NCBI GenBank assembly: GCA_021613535.1
Contig: CP075496.1
Location: forward strand, 6,758,001-6,822,000
From: Adineta vaga
Taxonomy: Eukaryota > Animalia > Rotifera
DNA length: 64,000 nt
Reading direction: 5' to 3'
In this document: in pieces, positions 3,001-22,130 of the stretch
How the letters are laid out: every line of letters starts with the position of its first letter
Numbering within the stretch: the stretch's first letter is position 1
The notes under the pieces: generated by a model
Seen by the model: only the letters and a program-made list of their open reading frames with translations
What the model was told of the DNA's origin: nothing
The model's database searches: none
Program-made: the position numbers and the translations under genes

Positions 3001-3504
3001 ATTTTGATCGTTTTCAATGCGTTCGATTGATTAATGATCGATTTCTATTATTGTAATGCACGTCGAATGATTGATAAACAATTGTGACATAGACAAATCA
3101 GTTTTTTATGGCAAAACAAATATCGATTTGTGAATCAAAACAAGATTTTGATAGTAAAATATCTTTTCTTATCTTATATGTTTCATAATACATACATACA
3201 TGTTCATTTCCTTAAAAAAAACTTTGGGTATCTCTAGTTCAACTAAATATGATTCAAGGAGTTGTTGGTAATCCAATCAAATTTATTTGTATGACAAGAG
3301 AAAGAATTCACCTACAACAAGAATCTTGTTCATTGACGTACACACAAACATACATAACAACCAAGTGAAACACACAAAGAGAGAAGAAGAAAAAACACAA
3401 ATCCGAAAGTGTGTAACAATATATATGGAACAGACAACAACAAAACAAAAGAAAGGAGAGAGAATTCTTATTCAGTCATGTGTTTCATCAAATGAATATC
3501 TTGT

Positions 3505-4298
3505 TTAAATGGGTTGAATCTTGAAGTGTAAACTAATAAGCGAGAAGACAAAGCATTTTAAATCTTGTACCAAATAATAAAAACAACGTAAACCATCAGG
3601 ATCACGACTGTTATTGATATCGATTAATGAACCAATTTTCGATGTTGTAAATGATATATGTTCATCACCGAGAACAATTTCAAGTTCTTGACGACCCGTA
3701 CGATCTTGTGGTGGCCTAAGAGAAAAAAAAAGATACACTCAGTTCATCTTAGTTAAGACGCAAAAGATATTTCTAGATCGATGATTTCTGATAATCAATC
3801 GGAAAAAATAAATTGCTTTTCCATCACTCATAATACTATCAATCAGTATTCACTATAACGTAAAACCGGTTAATATGATTAAAATTTATCAGAGAGTACC
3901 CACTGATAATTCAATGCTTTTGTTTGAAAATAGTATTATCATTCTAGTTTCATGAATCATCACTAAAATGTCTTTTCCCGGTAGAAATAGATCTTATTAT
4001 TTGATTGATTAGTGAAGAAAAAGTGCTAATTTGTAATTGAGCAATATATTCAAACTTACCAAACAGCATCATCTTCTTTCATAACATCAGATTCACTGAC
4101 AATTCTTTTGAGTTCTTCAATAACAGCTCGATTAACATAAACTTCTTTACGAATCAATGTGTCTTTTTTATAATTCGAGTTATTTGCATAACGTAATTTT
4201 CCATCAGGTCGAAATTCAAATTCAAGAAATTCATGGCCAAATTTCCCTTTATGTCCTACATAATATCGTAGATAGAAGTCATCAGTTGATTCAGCCAT
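3505..4298 (-). CDS. mago: Mago nashi (exon junction complex core), 2 exons: 4298-4060 and 3715-3505
   Basis: [38 protein letters not shown]...[32 protein letters not shown]. The GT-AG intron 4059-3716 splits the Trp codon (TG|G). Confidence 0.98.
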
Positions 4299-16424: not shown

Positions 16425-17558
16425 TCAATAATAAAAGATTCCAAATGCAGCTACAGCACAAAAAAGACTTTCATTTAAATAGACATATTCAGCCATGCCA
16501 TCAGTGTCCGAATCCCATAAACATCGACAACCATATTTCACACCTTGACCTTTATTTTCGCCAATAATACATTGAACAATAAATTTGTATCGATCAAATT
16601 TCATATTAGCTGCTTTAAGACGATCACGAATGTTAATTGTAACTATTGTTAAAAGAAAAAGAATAGATTCAGCTATAGTTTCAAAATGAGCAAATTTGAT
16701 CTGAAGAATAATCGTTCAACGAATATAAATAAGCATTATATTCTATAGCATATGAACAATAACTCAAGTTGTTCTTCACTTTTTATCTTAAATTACTCGT
16801 TCATTGTGACTGATACGAAGTAGAATTCGATGCATGTAATGATTTGAAGAATTAACAATTGAATTTTTATTTCAACCTCAATTCTAGAAAATGGCAATAA
16901 GAAATTTTATCATTGTGTTCTCAATTCATGGCTATGTCTATAGATATTTCAAATTGTTATAGTTGTTCTGAAAATCAATACGATATTTTATCATATCAAA
17001 TTGAACTTTAATAGTCTCATCTATTAATGTTTCTATATCACGAATGATTTTGTCATGGTGTCTATACACATATCGACTATTAATGGGTTTTTATGTAATA
17101 TATACGGCTGACACTTCTAAAGCATCGATCAATATGAATCTAATCTGATGTATGTCTGACAAAGATTTTGTTTAGAAAAGACATGTATGAAAACGATACG
17201 AATTTTAATACGAACTTGATTCGAGATGTTTAAATGCGTCTTACTCGATCACTATAGAAATATTCACTACGTTCGATGTAAATTATTACTTGGAAATGAT
17301 GAATGATTAGTTCTGGTTTCGATTGATTTTATTAAACTATATTCTATGGATAATTTCTTTTTCATGCGTTAAATACATACTAGCTTTAGTCCATTCTGCA
17401 CATGCTTCTTGTTCGAATTTTTTATCACCAAGAATATCACTAATACATGAATAGAGAATTTCTTGTACTTTCGTTGAACGAAATTTTTCTTCAAAATTTG
17501 GTCGTGTTATATAACCGGTCGTATCATTCGATTTAGTTGCTAGTGTTGCAGTAGCCAT
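16425..17558 (-). CDS. TCTEX1D2: Tctex1 domain dynein light chain (TCTEX1D2/DYNLT2B-like), exons 17558-17381 and 16642-16425
   Basis: YITRPNFEEKFRSTKV...IRDRLK...FDRYKFIVQCIIGENKGQGVKYGCRCLWDSDTDGMAEYVYLNESLFCAVAAFGIFYY. Confidence 0.93.
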
Positions 17559-17742
17559 TGAATTACCTCTAATTTATCTGAAAAAATAAAATAAGTCGTA
17601 TTTATATATAAATAAATATTAAAAAAATAGGAATTTTTTCAAAAATCAATACAACATTTTCAAAGATCATCATCACTACTGAGATTAAGAAAAAAAATAA
17701 ATAAAAGCATTGTTCTTTGTTGTTTTTGTATTCTTCTTTATA

Positions 17743-18693
17743 TTAATCATGTTGTTGATCAGCATATAAACATTTATCACTACCAGCTCGAGCTCGTTTA
17801 AGTTCACGATGAAAACTAATTGCTGATTTAAGTTCTTGTTCAAATTTAAATTTTTCCATTGATGGATGATTTTCTTTCAAAATAAATTTTTTACCACTAC
17901 CATATCGATATTTTGGTGGTGGTTGAGAAGCAAGTTGTGTCGAGTTTTGAGTAGATGACTGACGATTCTGCTCGACTGAAAACGATGTAGATTTACGAAT
18001 CGATGAAGTATGCGTAGTTTGAGTTCGTTCAGCAGTATCTAAATAATGAAGAAGATTGAAATAAGAATTGTATGATACGTTTTTGAAGTCTGATATACCT
18101 GACGACATTGGTGGATGTCGTTGTTGACTTTTAAGACTTAACATTCGTAATAATTTATCATCATTATCAGCTGTTATCAGTGCCATTCGAAAACGTGATT
18201 GATTTTGAAAAAGTTCTCTTCGATTAGCTTCAAAAAATTTTCTTAAATGATTTTCTCCCAATTGTGATGGACCAGGAATCGTAATCGGATAGTTACATGC
18301 TGCTTGTTCAGTATGTCGTGTTTGTGCACTTGCACGACGTGCAACTTTAGCTTTAACATTTGAATTATGATGATGATAATTTCTCCATATATTATAATTG
18401 ATTGGTGGTTTACCATCGAGACTTTTTGCGTATGTGGATTTATGTGAATATTTACCAGCTTCAAGCCACAAGGCATAATCAAGACTAGAAGAACTAACTG
18501 GTCGAGCTGTTGGTGTTGAACGTTCATCGAATGATTCTCTTAATGTATGAAATAATTCATGGTCAAGTGATGTTTTTGGATGTTCTAATGAAGTTAAACG
18601 TTCGGTTACATGTGGTTTAAATGAAACTGGATTTGTGTGTTCATCAATAATTAAACTTAGAGATGTTGACTCACGACCTCGTGCACTTTTCAT
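17743..18693 (-). CDS. TEX52: Testis-expressed protein 52-like; probable in-frame 60-nt intron at 18098-18039
   Basis: Blocks YALWLEAG..YNIWR, PITIPGPSQLGENHLRKF and LSLKSQQRHPPM resemble recalled TEX52 motifs (FHTWLDV..SNVWR, HPIPPPSWMGQNSFLTF, LKLRSEARAPPL). Confidence 0.7.
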   Translation of the reverse strand: MKSARGRESTSLSLIIDEHTNPVSFKPHVTERLTSLEHPKTSLDHELFHTLRESFDERSTPTARPVSSSSLDYALWLEAGKYSHKSTYAKSLDGKPPINYNIWRNYHHHNSNVKAKVARRASAQTRHTEQAACNYPITIPGPSQLGENHLRKFFEANRRELFQNQSRFRMALITADNDDKLLRMLSLKSQQRHPPMSSGISDFKNVSYNSYFNLLHYLDTAERTQTTHTSSIRKSTSFSVEQNRQSSTQNSTQLASQPPPKYRYGSGKKFILKENHPSMEKFKFEQELKSAISFHRELKRARAGSDKCLYADQQHD

Positions 18694-18731
18694 CTGAAAG
18701 AAAAAGCAAAATAAATGATGTTTATGTTTTT

Positions 18732-19664
18732 TTATTTGAAAAAAATCGTCATTTCAAATTGATCAATACGAAAACCCTCTCGATGATAAAATTTATGTGC
18801 TCGTCCTCGTTGACAACCACTATCTAATGCTATTCGATTTAAATTTAATTTTTCTGCTTCTTTCTTCATTGTATTAACCAATGCTCGACCAACACCCAAA
18901 CTTCGTTTGTTTTCATCCGTAATTAAATCATCACAATAGATAAATTTTGAATATTTCATATGTTGTGATAGACGATAAATGGCTAAACCAAGAACATTTC
19001 TTTTCTCATCATTACTTATTGCCACTAGCATATGAGCAGGACCTGTTTCACATATATTACGAATTTGACTAGCATATATTTTTTGATCCGAAGAAAGATT
19101 TGGTCGTAGTTGTCGAAAAACATCTTGTGCTTGAATTAAAATATCTTCATTCTTTGATAAATCACTTATATCAAGAACTTTAATTTGATCATTATCTTCA
19201 TTATAATGAATCTTATCAAGATAAAATCCAAATGAACTCATTTCGAGACCATGTCGAAAAAAGAATCGATGAGCATCCGTATTTGTTAAATCACATTGTA
19301 AAACAAGCGACGGTGCACCACATTCTTTTGCTTGATGAATTAAATCTTGAAATAAACGTGTACCTAAACCATGATTACGTTCTTTTTCATCAACAATTAA
19401 ATCATAAAGTTCAAAACGAATTCCATCGAATGTTGTCGGATGTGCACGATAAAATGCTAATGCTAAAACAATTGTTTCTGATTGATTTTGTCGTATAATA
19501 CCACAGATACGAGATTGTTTTGTTTGACATAATTTTTGCATATGATCTGCATAATCTTCTAATGTTAATTGTTTTAAATTCGGACGAAGTTGTTGATGAA
19601 CAGTTAAACATGATGGTAATCGAAATATAGTCTCATCAAATGGAATAATTCTTTCCTGAGACAT
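18732..19664 (-). CDS. Intronless tandem (two-domain) GNAT N-acetyltransferase, bacterial-like
   Basis: Two repeats each contain QLRPNL and an acetyl-CoA motif A (DLIVDEKERNHGLG; DDLITDENKRSLGVG), followed by DAHRFF and LDSGCQRGRAHKFY respectively. Confidence 0.93.
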   Translation of the reverse strand: MSQERIIPFDETIFRLPSCLTVHQQLRPNLKQLTLEDYADHMQKLCQTKQSRICGIIRQNQSETIVLALAFYRAHPTTFDGIRFELYDLIVDEKERNHGLGTRLFQDLIHQAKECGAPSLVLQCDLTNTDAHRFFFRHGLEMSSFGFYLDKIHYNEDNDQIKVLDISDLSKNEDILIQAQDVFRQLRPNLSSDQKIYASQIRNICETGPAHMLVAISNDEKRNVLGLAIYRLSQHMKYSKFIYCDDLITDENKRSLGVGRALVNTMKKEAEKLNLNRIALDSGCQRGRAHKFYHREGFRIDQFEMTIFFK

Positions 19665-19686
19665 TTTTAGAAACGTTAAATTGAAT

Positions 19687-19700
19687 GGAAACCTAGCAAC
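19687..19700 (-). promoter_or_regulatory. Candidate RFX X-box (half-site GTTGCTAGG)
   Basis: Minus strand gttgctaggtttcc, about 23 nt upstream of the GNAT ATG. It has one good half-site and one weak half-site. Confidence 0.35.
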
Positions 19701-20770
19701 TGTTACGATTTCTATGGTATAGTATGTTATCTTGATCTTTATCGAATGAAATTTTAATTATTCTTTTTTTCACGACATCTATCTGAAGAAAGAAAGCAAA
19801 TAACATTCGAAGTTCTTCCAATCGAATCATGAAGAAAAAGTTTTGATTATAGTAAAATCTATGGCATGGTAGATATTTATCAATCTATTTCTATTTTCTT
19901 CTGAAAATTTTAAATGACAAGAAATGTCTATGAAAGATCAACTATCTTGACTAAAGAATAAACAAGCATTGTATCAGTTGATTATAATGATATGATGGAA
20001 ATTAATTTGCTATTCTCTTTCTGTTTTACATATAAATCTGATGATCCAAACTACGTCATGTTTCTGAGATGCATATCTAATTCACTTAAATATCTTTGAA
20101 GAATCATACCTACTCAACATTTGTTGTTTTGTTCGATTGATGATAAAACTATGTGAAATGTAAATCTATGTTCAATTGAATGACAAATTATACGAGTTGA
20201 GTATCGAACTTTGTACTGCTGATGACAACATGGAGTTGTATTTCTTCTGAAACTCAATTGAACAATATTTGAGTAGATAATTTTGACAAGAATTCAAGCA
20301 TAAAAGATGATATTGAAAATGAAAACTAAATATAAGTAGTCATCATACTATAATACTATGTGCGCGAACATCTGATCAATCATCTGTTTGATTTACCATG
20401 ATACTGACTTATTAACTATTCATTATGTTTCTCTTCGTATAAAGACTGATACTTACATCTAGTTGAACACTTGAATAGAATCTAAATCAACAAGTTCATA
20501 CTTATTCAGGTGAGAAAGTAAGGCGCGAAAAATTTCAGTAGTAACTAACTTTCACGTTTCCAAATCAACAAAATTATTTCATTCATTCGAATATGTCGTT
20601 TTTTCGACATTGTCTATGAGAATAGAAAATTCATCATTAATCATAAATTTAACACTGTGTATTATGAAGATTTCTTTGAATAAAACTTACTGAAATTTAA
20701 CATTATCTTCATGTTTTCAACAACTACAAAAAGTTAATCTAGTTCTTTTCTTCACTTAAATCTGTATTCT

Positions 20771-22130
20771 ATGGCTCTTACTACTTCAATGCGATTATCC
20801 ATTCCATTACCAACGATAAAAACAGAAGAAAATTCATCAAATTCACATTCAATATCATCCATTACAAATGATCATAATAATAATTTAACAAAACTATATA
20901 AATATTCTCAAGAAACTGAAATGAAATCTTATATAGATCAAAATGGAACGATTCGTCAATATCGACAATCGACCGAACGTGCATTACTTGCTCAACGAAA
21001 AATTTTCCTTCGAAAAAAATTAGGTGAAGGTTCATTTTCATCAGTACGCGAAGGTTTCGATATGTTTCATCAACATAAAGTTGCTATCAAAGTAAACATC
21101 AGTCTATTCGTCATTATTATTATTGATTCAAAGAATCAATCTTTGCTAGATTGTAGATACTCAACGAGCTTCCAAAGATTTTCAAGAAAAATTTCTTCCA
21201 CGTGAATTAGATATTTGGACACGTGTTAATCATGAAAATATTATTAAAATGTATCATCATTTTATTGAATGTGGAAAAATTTTCATGGTAAATTCATTAC
21301 AGATCGATTTAAATAGATAGTTTGTTTTCGTGGATAAATAGATACTTGAATTTGCTTCACAAGGTGATCTTTTAACGTATGTTCAGCGTGTTGGTGCTAT
21401 ACCTGAACAAAAAAGAAATCTATGGTCATCACAATTATGTAATGCAGTCAGATATCTTCATGAATTAGAAGTTGTACATCGTGATTTAAAATTAGAAAAT
21501 CTCTTATTAGATACGAATGGTAAGATAAATGAGAACAATTTTTAATGAAAAAGAAAATCTGTCCGTTTATTTAGATAATATGAAACTATGTGATTTTGGT
21601 TTTTCTAAAGATGTTCTTAAATGTAAAGAATATTTAAGTAAAACCTATTGTGGATCACGTGCATATGTTTCACCGGAAATTTTACTTGGACTTCCTTATG
21701 ATGCTAAAAAAGCGGATATATGGGCGATCGGTGTTATTCTATATATCTTTGTTACGGGTGTTGTAAGTAATGATCCTTTTTTTTGTGATATTATATCGTT
21801 TTATTACAATTAGATGCCATTTAAAGAAGATAAAAACAATCAGTTGATTTTAAAACAAGTTTGTTTAAAGAGATATTTAGATCTTGAAGAGAGAACATCT
21901 TTTTCTAGCATCAAAAATTACAATTACATTGGCCAAATGAAAACGAACGTGAACAATCAGCACGAAATCTTATCCTGAATATATTTACATATGATTGGCA
22001 AAAACGACCCAATATACAACAAGTTACTTCACATCAATGGTTTACTCTAACTCAATCAACTGAAATAATATCGACAACAATTGTACGAACAAATCGAATG
22101 GCAATTAAACGAAAAAGTCGTTCATCATAA
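20771..22130 (+). CDS. TSSK: Testis-specific serine/threonine kinase (TSSK)-like, 6 exons
   Basis: GEGSFSSV, VAIK/IVD...DFQEKFLPREL, HRDLKLENLLL, DFGFSK, LSKTYCGSRAYVSPEIL and YDAKKADIWAIGV. The KFLPREL and SKTYCGS motifs are typical of TSSK kinases. Confidence 0.9.

What the first reader, a model, noticed from the sequence alone, without database searches (positions are those of the whole stretch)
16425..19700. Operon-like trio: foreign GNAT, TEX52-like and TCTEX1D2, with only 38 nt between the GNAT stop and the next ATG
Seen: the three genes are co-oriented on the minus strand. The GNAT stop overlaps an AATAAA (18736-18731). It is followed by 38 nt that end in a textbook acceptor (ttttgctttttctttcag) directly abutting the TEX52-like ATG, with no GT donor and no room for a promoter in between. 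TCTEX1D2 starts 184 nt after the TEX52 stop and also has an acceptor (ttattttttcag at 17579-17578) 19 nt before its ATG. Knowledge: bdelloids have spliced-leader trans-splicing, and nematode operons are resolved by adjacent polyA and trans-splice sites. Inference: either this is a polycistronic unit resolved by SL trans-splicing, or the GNAT landed inside the 5'UTR intron of TEX52. Either route would let an incoming foreign gene be expressed from a host promoter.
Basis: partly seen in the sequence, partly recalled or inferred. Interest (0 to 1): 0.85.

Follow-up and report, generated by a model that had tools for sequence, protein, structure and literature searches.

The report
Three co-transcribed genes in a rotifer
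In the rotifer Adineta vaga, a bacterial-type acetyltransferase gene and two cilium-related genes sit head to tail behind one conserved promoter and look like an ancient operon, but attachment of the spliced leader to the downstream genes has not yet been seen.

Summary
The genome is Adineta vaga, chromosome-scale contig C4.

- **Annotation.** The middle gene is a true TEX52 relative (hhalign 97.6% against amphioxus TEX52-like).
- **Conservation.** The order GNAT, TEX52-like, TCTEX1D2 holds in A. ricciae, eight metagenome contigs and Didymodactylos. Relics sit in the A. vaga ohnologous block on C1.
- **Splice sites.** A pyrimidine tract plus AG abuts the TEX52-like ATG in 12 taxa, GC-rich ones included. 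One precedes the TCTEX1D2 ATG in 8 of 8.
- **RNA.** One A. vaga RNA contig runs from GNAT coding sequence through the 38-nt spacer into spliced TEX52-like. In another bdelloid, one RNA contig carries spliced TEX52-like, the unprocessed spacer and spliced TCTEX1D2.
- **Natural deletions.** Where the GNAT is dead (Rotaria sordida) or deleted (two other lineages), its promoter motifs survive almost unchanged. That promoter therefore most likely serves the downstream genes.

Best reading (0.55): an old operon-like unit resolved at conserved 3' splice sites, most likely by the bdelloid spliced leader.

Spliced-leader junctions could not be tested because only contigs were available. TCTEX1D2 may have its own TATA/Inr promoter. 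The scan noted two other operon candidates in this genome; they were not checked here.

The parts
20350..20435 (-). Conserved non-coding element between the divergent kinase gene (ATG 20771, + strand) and the trio. Candidate shared enhancer or promoter element.
   Evidence: 94% identical over 82 nt to Rotaria sordida and 87% to A. ricciae. A 30-nt core is also present in L029. Single copy in the genome. No Rfam match. No RNA contig covers it.
19772..19782 (-). Promoter motif ATAGATGTCGT upstream of the GNAT.
   Evidence: Exact in A. vaga, R. sordida, L029, L030, L036, L038 and L039; 1 mismatch in A. ricciae. This includes lineages whose GNAT is dead or deleted.
19737..19749 (-). TCATTCGATAAAG, a TATA-like box about 25-30 nt upstream of the RNA contig 5' ends.
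   Evidence: Exact in R. sordida (dead GNAT) and L039; 1 mismatch in A. ricciae, L030 and L038. GNAT RNA contigs end at 19714, 19712 and 19705 in three runs.
19688..19700 (-). Conserved 5'UTR motif GTTGCTAGGTTTC.
   Evidence: Exact in A. ricciae, L029 and L039; 1-3 mismatches in R. sordida, L030, L032, L036 and L038. It lies inside the RNA contigs.
18732..19664 (-). First cistron: intronless tandem-GNAT acetyltransferase, 310 aa.
   Evidence: Pfam PF00583 twice. RNA contigs cover 18786..19714. Bdelloid-wide family.
18731..18736 (-). AATAAA overlapping the GNAT stop codon. Likely poly(A) signal of the GNAT mRNA.
   Evidence: Read directly. AATAAA or ATTAAA lies at or just after the stop in about half of 10 taxa.
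18694..18731 (-). 38-nt intercistronic spacer ending in the 3' splice site ttttgctttttctttcag.
   Evidence: Spacers are 30-48 nt and AG abuts the ATG in 10 GNAT-bearing taxa, plus R. sordida and L029. X13 RNA contig record 7 crosses it.
17743..18693 (-). Second cistron: TEX52-like. Exon 1 is 18693..18099, the in-frame intron is 18098..18039, and exon 2 is 18038..17743.
   Evidence: Joint 18038/18099 in four runs. A. vaga protein P0001 is 296 aa. hhalign against amphioxus TEX52-like gives 97.6%.
17621..17645 (-). Conserved spacer motif (TTTTTGAAAA.TAATATTTTT-like) at the 3' end of the TEX52-like RNA contig. Candidate 3'-end or intercistronic element.
   Evidence: Present in A. vaga, R. sordida, L029 and L035; weaker in L036 and L025. 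X1 contig of TEX52-like ends at 17620.
17599..17610 (-). TATATATAAATA, a possible TATA box 31 nt upstream of 17579. This is the basis of the rival 'own promoter' reading for TCTEX1D2.
   Evidence: Read directly. TATA-rich blocks lie at similar distance in R. sordida, L029 and L035, but not in GC-rich L032.
17578..17592 (-). Pyrimidine tract plus AG, 19 nt before the TCTEX1D2 ATG. Candidate trans-splice acceptor.
   Evidence: Y-tract-AG lies 1-38 nt before the ATG in 8 of 8 taxa, including GC-rich L032 and Didymodactylos. X13 contig ends at 17579.
16425..17558 (-). Third gene: TCTEX1D2 (dynein light chain Tctex type). Exon 1 CDS is 17558..17381, the intron is 17380..16643, and exon 2 is 16642..16425.
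   Evidence: Joint 16642/17381 in three runs. Pfam PF03645. P0094 is 131 aa; cluster mates are named Tctex1 domain-containing protein 2.

Best explanation
The three genes form one old, conserved transcription unit.

A TATA-like promoter about 50 nt upstream of the GNAT ATG starts transcription near 19715. The RNA runs through the GNAT, the 38-nt spacer and the TEX52-like gene, and probably on into TCTEX1D2.

The GNAT mRNA is cut and polyadenylated just after the AATAAA that overlaps its stop codon. The TEX52-like mRNA is made by using the 3' splice site that abuts its ATG (18694|18693). The partner is most likely the 23-nt bdelloid spliced leader, which would supply cap and leader. TCTEX1D2 would be released the same way at 17578|17577.

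Shown here: the anatomy, its conservation, RNA that crosses both spacers, and survival of the promoter where the GNAT is lost. Inferred: a single primary transcript, the position of the GNAT 3' end, and the use of the spliced leader.
For: 1. **Anatomy.** It is exact.

2. **RNA across GNAT/TEX52-like.** X13 contig record 7 (depth 86) runs 18807..18099 and then 18038..18007. It crosses GNAT coding sequence, the spacer, the ATG and a spliced TEX52-like intron. X13 has no coverage of the 19841-21000 intergenic region, so DNA contamination is unlikely.

3. **RNA across TEX52-like/TCTEX1D2.** Logan RNA contig L025 comes from a relative of L036 (86% nt identity). It holds the GNAT relic, TEX52-like with its intron removed, the 128-nt spacer collinear with genomic DNA, and TCTEX1D2 with its intron removed.

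4. **TEX52-like acceptor.** A Y-tract-AG abuts the TEX52-like ATG in 12 taxa while the rest of the spacer is unalignable. This holds in genomes of 50-55% GC.

5. **TCTEX1D2 acceptor.** The same kind of site precedes the TCTEX1D2 ATG in 8 of 8 taxa.

6. **Natural deletions.**
   - R. sordida: the GNAT is decayed (ATG TCG TAA, fragments at 36-48% identity), yet ATAGATGTCGT and TCATTCGATAAAG are exact and GTTGCTAGGCTTC has one mismatch.
   - L029: most of the GNAT CDS is deleted; the outer motifs are exact and the TATA-like box has two mismatches.
   - L036: a clean deletion leaves ATGTCG fused to the last codons. ATAGATGTCGT stays exact and the 5'UTR motif has two mismatches; the TATA-like box was not detected.
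   - L036/L025: the AG before the TEX52-like ATG is lost (CAA), and the RNA carries the unspliced leader.

7. **Gene order.** It is kept in A. ricciae, eight metagenome contigs and Didymodactylos. The A. vaga C1 ohnolog block keeps the GNAT plus a TCTEX1D2 pseudogene.

8. **Spliced leader.** It exists here: 59 genomic copies against 0 in the control. The sequence matches the literature (PMC3795323). [quoted passage not shown]

9. **No cis joint.** None into 18693 or 17577 appears in four RNA runs.
Against: - No spliced-leader junction was seen. Read laying returned contigs only and listed no SL loose ends. An SL+ATG pattern scan of JGI metagenome contigs found nothing.
- A contig across two genes does not prove one molecule.
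- In A. vaga no contig covers 17580-17619, between TEX52-like and TCTEX1D2.
- TCTEX1D2 has a TATA-like box 31 nt upstream of 17579, the A of an Inr-like TCAGAT, and that is exactly where the X13 contig ends.
- In Didymodactylos the spacers are 519 nt and 3.2 kb. Tight packing is therefore not ancestral or not universal.
- AATAAA is absent from the spacer in about half the taxa.
Confidence: 0.55

Rival explanations
1. Three independent genes that happen to be tightly packed. TEX52-like and/or TCTEX1D2 start from their own core promoters in the spacer or in the upstream gene's 3' end. The bridging RNA is read-through or overlapping UTRs. The T-rich tract plus CAG is an Inr or promoter feature, or the acceptor of a short private outron.
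For: For TCTEX1D2, TATATATAAATA (17610-17599) lies 31 nt upstream of 17579, the A of TCAGAT, where the X13 contig ends. TATA-rich blocks sit at similar distance in R. sordida, L029 and L035. No A. vaga contig crosses 17580-17619. Didymodactylos has long spacers. The AATAAA after the GNAT stop could double as a TATA-like box about 30 nt before the CAG.
Against: For TEX52-like, a start at the CAG would leave a 2-nt leader in 12 taxa. GC-rich L031 and L032 keep the pyrimidine tract plus AG but have no TATA. GNAT promoter motifs stay near-exact where the GNAT ORF has decayed. X13 and L025 contigs cross the spacers. TCTEX1D2 leaders would be only 3-13 nt in Didymodactylos, L032 and L025.
Confidence: 0.25
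2. The GNAT sits inside a 5'UTR intron of TEX52-like. Transcripts from the shared start either stay unspliced and give GNAT mRNA, or are cis-spliced from a short first exon to the acceptor at 18694 and give TEX52-like mRNA.
For: Shared promoter evidence. A conserved acceptor at the ATG. CTAG|GTTTCC in the conserved 5'UTR motif could be read as a donor.
Against: No joint from the 197xx region to 18693 appears in any of four RNA runs, while both true introns were found. The candidate donor is GC in L030 and L038, CT in L032 and TT in L036. Contigs drop rare forms, so this is not excluded.
Confidence: 0.08
3. A stable bicistronic or tricistronic mRNA is translated without processing, by re-initiation or leaky scanning. 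The acceptor-like tracts would have no function.
For: Bridging contigs with internal introns removed.
Against: A 310-codon upstream ORF makes re-initiation very inefficient (established knowledge of eukaryotic translation). Conservation of Y-tract-AG in 12 and 8 taxa would be unexplained. The AG is lost only where the upstream ORF has shrunk to 6 codons.
Confidence: 0.05

Closest known systems
Tunicate (Ciona) operons and C. elegans 'SL1-type' operons, which have almost no intercistronic region
   Same: Same-strand genes. The upstream poly(A) signal lies a few tens of nt or less from the downstream trans-splice acceptor. A single spliced-leader class is used, with no evidence of a specialised SL2. 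The Ciona operon population is in PMC2760879 (abstract seen). The lack of an intercistronic region and the SL1-type class are from my own knowledge (Satou et al. 2008; Williams et al. 1999).
   Different: SL addition is not demonstrated here. The second spacer (184 nt) resembles the roughly 100-nt spacers of SL2-type operons more than this class.
Hydra flp: a horizontally transferred gene incorporated into an operon (PMC3273482, title and abstract seen)
   Same: A putatively foreign gene and host genes share one transcription unit in an animal that has SL trans-splicing.
   Different: Here the candidate foreign gene is the first cistron. The unit is conserved across a whole class and through a genome duplication. 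The foreign origin of the GNAT is only weakly supported.
Paulinella micropora proposal that SL trans-splicing rescues host genes after an alien gene inserts into the 5'UTR (PMC6053224)
   Same: That paper names rotifers as a place where this might matter.
   Different: That is a hypothesis with one example in an amoeba. Here there are comparative natural deletions, but still no SL reads.
Chaetognath operons (PMC12460157)
   Same: A gnathiferan relative in which 18% of genes lie in SL-resolved operons, defined by spacing under 250 bp plus SL reads.
   Different: Genome-wide and read-supported there; a single locus and contig-level evidence here. My motif scan did not find the same sharp junction elsewhere in 41 sampled A. 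vaga sites.

Membership tests
SL-resolved eukaryotic operon | Two or more same-strand genes with short intercistronic distances | tested here: met
   38 nt and 184 nt in A. vaga. 30-48 nt in 10 taxa. 93-184 nt for the second spacer.
SL-resolved eukaryotic operon | One promoter and a polycistronic primary transcript | tested here: inconclusive
   Contigs cross both spacers, and promoter motifs survive GNAT loss. Contigs cannot prove single molecules, and no TSS mapping was available.
SL-resolved eukaryotic operon | Downstream mRNAs carry the spliced leader at an acceptor upstream of the ATG | not testable with these tools
   Acceptors are conserved and SL genes are present. Read laying served contigs only, with no SL loose ends. 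The SL+ATG pattern scan gave 0 hits.
SL-resolved eukaryotic operon | Upstream gene 3'-end signal just before the downstream acceptor | tested here: inconclusive
   AATAAA overlaps the GNAT stop in A. vaga. AATAAA or ATTAAA is present in about half of 10 taxa. The poly(A) site itself was not seen.
GNAT acetyltransferase (Pfam PF00583) | Matches the family profile above the curated cut-off | tested here: met
   86.4 bits against a cut-off of 20.7, in two stretches. No specific NCBIfam reaches its cut-off.
Horizontally acquired (non-metazoan) gene | Closest relatives outside bdelloids are non-metazoan, and metazoan homologues are absent or more distant | tested here: inconclusive
   The nearest prokaryote hits are single-domain GNATs of Betaproteobacteria MAGs at about 36% identity. 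The nearest Atlas clusters shown are all bacterial. No search with taxonomy across eukaryotes was possible, so no alien-index or tree test was done.
TEX52 (testis-expressed protein 52) | Significant full-length similarity to named TEX52 proteins | tested here: met
   The bdelloid profile hits Branchiostoma P0156 at E 9e-8, and its cluster mate is named TEX52-like. hhalign gives 97.6%, E 4.5e-12, over residues 22-200. No Pfam or PDB match.
Tctex-1 dynein light chain / TCTEX1D2 | Tctex-1 domain and orthology to TCTEX1D2 | tested here: met
   PF03645 at 73.5 bits on exon 2. The 90% cluster holds Rotaria proteins named Tctex1 domain-containing protein 2.

The most novel reading that the evidence does not exclude
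This is a documented candidate operon in a bdelloid rotifer, older than the bdelloid genome duplication. A bacterial-type GNAT is the first cistron, ahead of two cilium-related host genes. Independent natural deletions show that the downstream genes depend on the promoter in front of the GNAT. They also show that the trans-splice acceptor is dispensable once the upstream ORF is gone. If so, SL trans-splicing let a foreign gene share a host promoter for tens of millions of years.
Probability: 0.45. Interest if true: 0.72.

Novelty: new member of a known kind. Interest (0 to 1): 0.6.

Why it matters
Bdelloids combine two traits: spliced-leader trans-splicing and an unusually high load of foreign genes. 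Whether the two are linked is an open question. One idea is that trans-splicing lets incoming genes use host promoters without silencing the host gene. This has been raised for other organisms (PMC6053224; Hydra flp, PMC3273482). I found no paper in the searchable library that documents operons in bdelloids.

This locus offers a concrete, testable case with built-in natural controls: species with the GNAT intact, dead, partly deleted and cleanly deleted. It also shows that gene order can be held for a very long time in a genome otherwise described as scrambled (PMC12460157). A few RNA experiments would settle it.

Tried and rejected
1. **Direct SL evidence.**
   - Read laying gave contigs only and no SL loose ends.
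   - The pattern ACTTACCAAGAG+ATGARRASTKC found 0 hits in JGI metagenome contigs.
   - All metagenome loci with the gene are DNA, since their introns are retained.

2. **Genome-wide generality.** AATAAA-N5-35-Y9-AGATG occurs 109 times against 35 for the reversed control. In 41 other sampled sites, none has long ORFs on both sides. The best one (C1:1124332) is an ordinary 57-nt intron inside an ankyrin/FEM1-like gene. The excess therefore reflects introns, not operon junctions. I did not fetch the remaining sites.

3. **GNAT-TEX52 fusion through an intron from GTATTG (18769).** Rejected. The frame runs into a stop, the GNAT C-terminus and stop are conserved, and no joint was seen.

4. **CTAG|GTTTCC as a 5' donor.** Rejected, because GT is not conserved.

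5. **The conserved 85-nt element as an RNA gene.** No Rfam hit, single copy, and no RNA contig.

6. **TEX52-like function.** No Pfam, PDB or Atlas hit.

7. **Reading GTTGCTAGG as a full RFX X-box.** It fits only as a half-site, so it is not claimed.

Full report
**What is there.**

The window is G000:C4:6758001-6822000 of a 100.8-Mb, six-contig assembly. Database names identify it as Adineta vaga: I4U23_019146 is TCTEX1D2 and I4U23_019147 is the middle gene.

On the minus strand lie three genes:
- a 310-aa intronless tandem-GNAT ORF (19664..18732);
- a 38-nt spacer;
- a 316-codon ORF (18693..17743);
- a 184-nt spacer;
- a two-exon Tctex-1 gene (ATG 17558, stop 16425).

That covers the AATAAA over the GNAT stop, the acceptor-like tract abutting the ATG at 18693, and the second tract with AG at 17579-17578.

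**RNA.**

The four runs laid (X1, X5, X6, X13) hold RNA, because both introns are skipped. These are a 60-nt in-frame intron in the middle gene (18098..18039) and a 738-nt intron in TCTEX1D2.

- All three genes are expressed.
- GNAT contigs reach 19714, 19712 and 19705. That is 25-30 nt downstream of a conserved GATAAAG, which fits a conventional start site.
- GNAT contigs break at 18786-18815. An expressed paralogue shares that stretch: the X5 loose end matches the 3' end of the C1 copy.
- In the deepest run, X13, one contig (depth 86) runs from 18807 inside the GNAT CDS through the stop, the spacer and the ATG. It continues across the spliced intron of the middle gene.
- X13 has no coverage of the intergenic 19841-21000, so genomic contamination is an unlikely source.
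- No contig covers 17580-17619.
- No spliced-leader letters were listed as loose ends. Contigs drop short tips, so this says little.

**Identity of the genes.**

- The middle protein has no Pfam, PDB or Atlas match.
- A profile of 11 bdelloid homologues (A1) finds non-bdelloid proteins. Among them is a Branchiostoma protein whose cluster mate is named testis-expressed protein 52-like. hhalign gives 97.6% probability.
- TCTEX1D2 is confirmed.
- The GNAT belongs to a bdelloid-wide family. The nearest relatives found outside it are single-domain bacterial GNATs of about 145 aa at about 36% identity. A bacterial origin followed by internal duplication is plausible but was not tested phylogenetically.

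**Age and conservation.**

- A. vaga has a 57%-identical GNAT on C1 in a block collinear with this window. A decayed TCTEX1D2 pseudogene lies 6 kb downstream of it in the same orientation, and a 1444-aa gene is inserted between them. A broken third GNAT copy lies on C3.
- The order GNAT, TEX52-like, TCTEX1D2 is found in A. ricciae, in eight metagenome contigs and in Didymodactylos carnosus. From my own knowledge of Nowell et al., D. carnosus is the deepest-branching sequenced bdelloid.
- The second Didymodactylos copy keeps a GNAT fragment upstream of TEX52-like.
- The unit therefore predates the bdelloid genome duplication. It is not a recent landing.

**The splice sites.**

In ten GNAT-bearing taxa the GNAT-to-TEX52-like spacer is 30-48 nt. 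Apart from its ends it cannot be aligned, yet it always ends in a pyrimidine tract plus AG directly against the ATG. R. sordida and L029 show the same. The GC-rich L031 and L032 are the most telling, because such a tract is not a by-product of base composition there.

Upstream of TCTEX1D2 a pyrimidine tract plus AG lies 1-38 nt before the ATG in 8 of 8 taxa.

The bdelloid spliced leader GGCTTATTACAACTTACCAAGAG (PMC3795323) has 59 genomic copies here against none for the control. It is reported on more than half of bdelloid transcripts (PMC1925144).

**Natural experiments.**

- *Rotaria sordida.* The locus is fully collinear: kinase, conserved element, GNAT, TEX52-like, TCTEX1D2. The GNAT is a wreck, with ATG TCG TAA and fragments at 36-48% identity in different frames. 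The motifs in front of it are ATAGATGTCGT (exact), TCATTCGATAAAG (exact) and GTTGCTAGGCTTC (one mismatch) compared with Adineta.
- *L029.* Most of the GNAT CDS is gone. The two outer motifs are exact and the TATA-like box has two mismatches.
- *L036/L037.* The CDS is cleanly deleted, leaving ATGTCG fused to ATGTTCGAAGTGTAA. ATAGATGTCGT is kept exactly and the 5'UTR motif has two mismatches; the TATA-like box was not detected.
- *L025.* This RNA contig comes from a close relative of L036 (86% nt identity). It starts inside that relic and continues through TEX52-like (intron removed), the 128-nt spacer (collinear with DNA) and TCTEX1D2 (intron removed). In this lineage the AG before the TEX52-like ATG has mutated to AA.

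Put together, a promoter that stays under selection after its own ORF has decayed must serve something downstream. The acceptor seems needed only while a long upstream ORF or its debris has to be removed.

**Mechanism proposed.**

One promoter near 19737-19782, aided perhaps by the 85-nt conserved element at 20350-20435, drives a primary transcript through the three genes. The GNAT mRNA ends in the spacer after AAUAAA. TEX52-like and TCTEX1D2 mRNAs are released by trans-splicing of the spliced leader at 18693 and 17577.

The first junction resembles the Ciona and SL1-type operon class, which has almost no intercistronic region. The second has a spacer with a conserved TTTTTGAAAA.TAATATTTTT motif, where the TEX52-like contig ends (17620).

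I put 0.55 on this as a whole. Sharing of the promoter by GNAT and TEX52-like is more likely (about 0.75). Inclusion of TCTEX1D2 is less likely (about 0.5).

**Rivals.**

- *TCTEX1D2 has its own promoter.* This is a real possibility. TATATATAAATA lies 31 nt upstream of 17579, the A of an Inr-like TCAGAT, and the X13 contig ends exactly there. The same end point is also what a de Bruijn graph would give at the branch between SL-joined and unspliced RNA, because the leader ends in AG. The observation cannot decide between the two.
- *TEX52-like has its own start at the CAG.* This would leave a 2-nt leader, which is implausible as a conserved design.
- *The GNAT sits in a 5'UTR intron.* This found no joint in four runs, and its only candidate donor is not conserved.
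- *Translation of an unprocessed polycistronic mRNA.* This would leave the conserved acceptors unexplained.

**Generality.**

A motif scan for the same sharp junction found 109 sites against 35 in the control. In 41 sampled sites none is a gene-gene junction, and the best candidate is an ordinary intron. The scan's first readers noted two other operon candidates elsewhere in this genome. I did not test them.

**Novelty.**

SL-resolved operons are known in nematodes, tunicates and chaetognaths. From my own knowledge they are also known in flatworms. A foreign gene inside a Hydra operon is also known. The idea that trans-splicing eases gene transfer has been published with rotifers named as a case to look at (PMC6053224). 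I found no paper documenting a bdelloid operon, but subscription journals are not covered. I therefore file this as a new member of a known kind, with unusually good comparative support and one decisive experiment missing.

I searched the unspliced ORF and the exons by reference.

Noticed in passing
window 20350-20435: An 85-nt non-coding element between the kinase and the GNAT is 94% identical between Adineta vaga and Rotaria sordida and 87% to A. ricciae. A 30-nt core (ATGATTGATCA.ATGTTCGCGCACATAGTA) is also in L029. It is single copy, has no Rfam match and no poly(A) RNA coverage. It contains a TTCGCGC (E2F-like) core, which I read from memory and did not test.
   Followed up: partly
G000:C1:6230262-6231164 and C1:6237200-6237620 (L012 4263-5183; L014 about 2200-2620): The ohnologous block keeps an intact, expressed GNAT (57% identity) and a decayed TCTEX1D2 pseudogene. 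TEX52-like is lost there. A 1444-aa TPR-rich gene is inserted on the opposite strand, ending 48 nt after the GNAT stop.
   Followed up: partly
G000:C3:87316-88220 (L013): A third GNAT copy, split over two frames with 4 TGA and 1 TAG inside. Probably a pseudogene.
   Followed up: no
G000, 59 sites (e.g. C5:9884356-9925969, C2:8684673-8691979): Spliced-leader genes lie mostly as inverted pairs about 154 nt apart, in clusters. Genomic copies start TGCTTATT..., whereas the published leader starts GG. A minority variant has A for C at position 10 (TGCTTATTAAAAC...). It is often the partner in a pair. Whether it is a second leader class is unknown.
   Followed up: no
window 19772-19782 and L026, L027, L029, L030, L036, L038, L039: The conserved promoter motif ATAGATGTCGT is preceded by a pyrimidine tract. 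It opens a two-codon mini-ORF (ATG TCG TGA/TAA/TAG) that repeats the GNAT's own start ATGTCG. It lies upstream of the RNA contig 5' ends, so it is probably a protein-binding site and not an acceptor.
   Followed up: partly
L032 about 1092 (ENA k141_255480): In this 50%-GC bdelloid the GNAT reading frame holds an in-frame TAG near codon 31, while the rest aligns at 62%. This could be early pseudogenisation, an error or a later start.
   Followed up: no
window 18039-18098: The TEX52-like intron is 60 nt, in frame and free of stops. ORF finders therefore read a 316-aa protein where the mRNA encodes 296 aa. Several database homologues of 315 aa are the unspliced reading.
   Followed up: yes
window 3503-4255 and L028: Mago nashi lies about 12 kb downstream on the same strand in A. 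vaga. In one Didymodactylos copy it lies directly upstream of TEX52-like. The neighbourhood was rearranged around a stable core.
   Followed up: no
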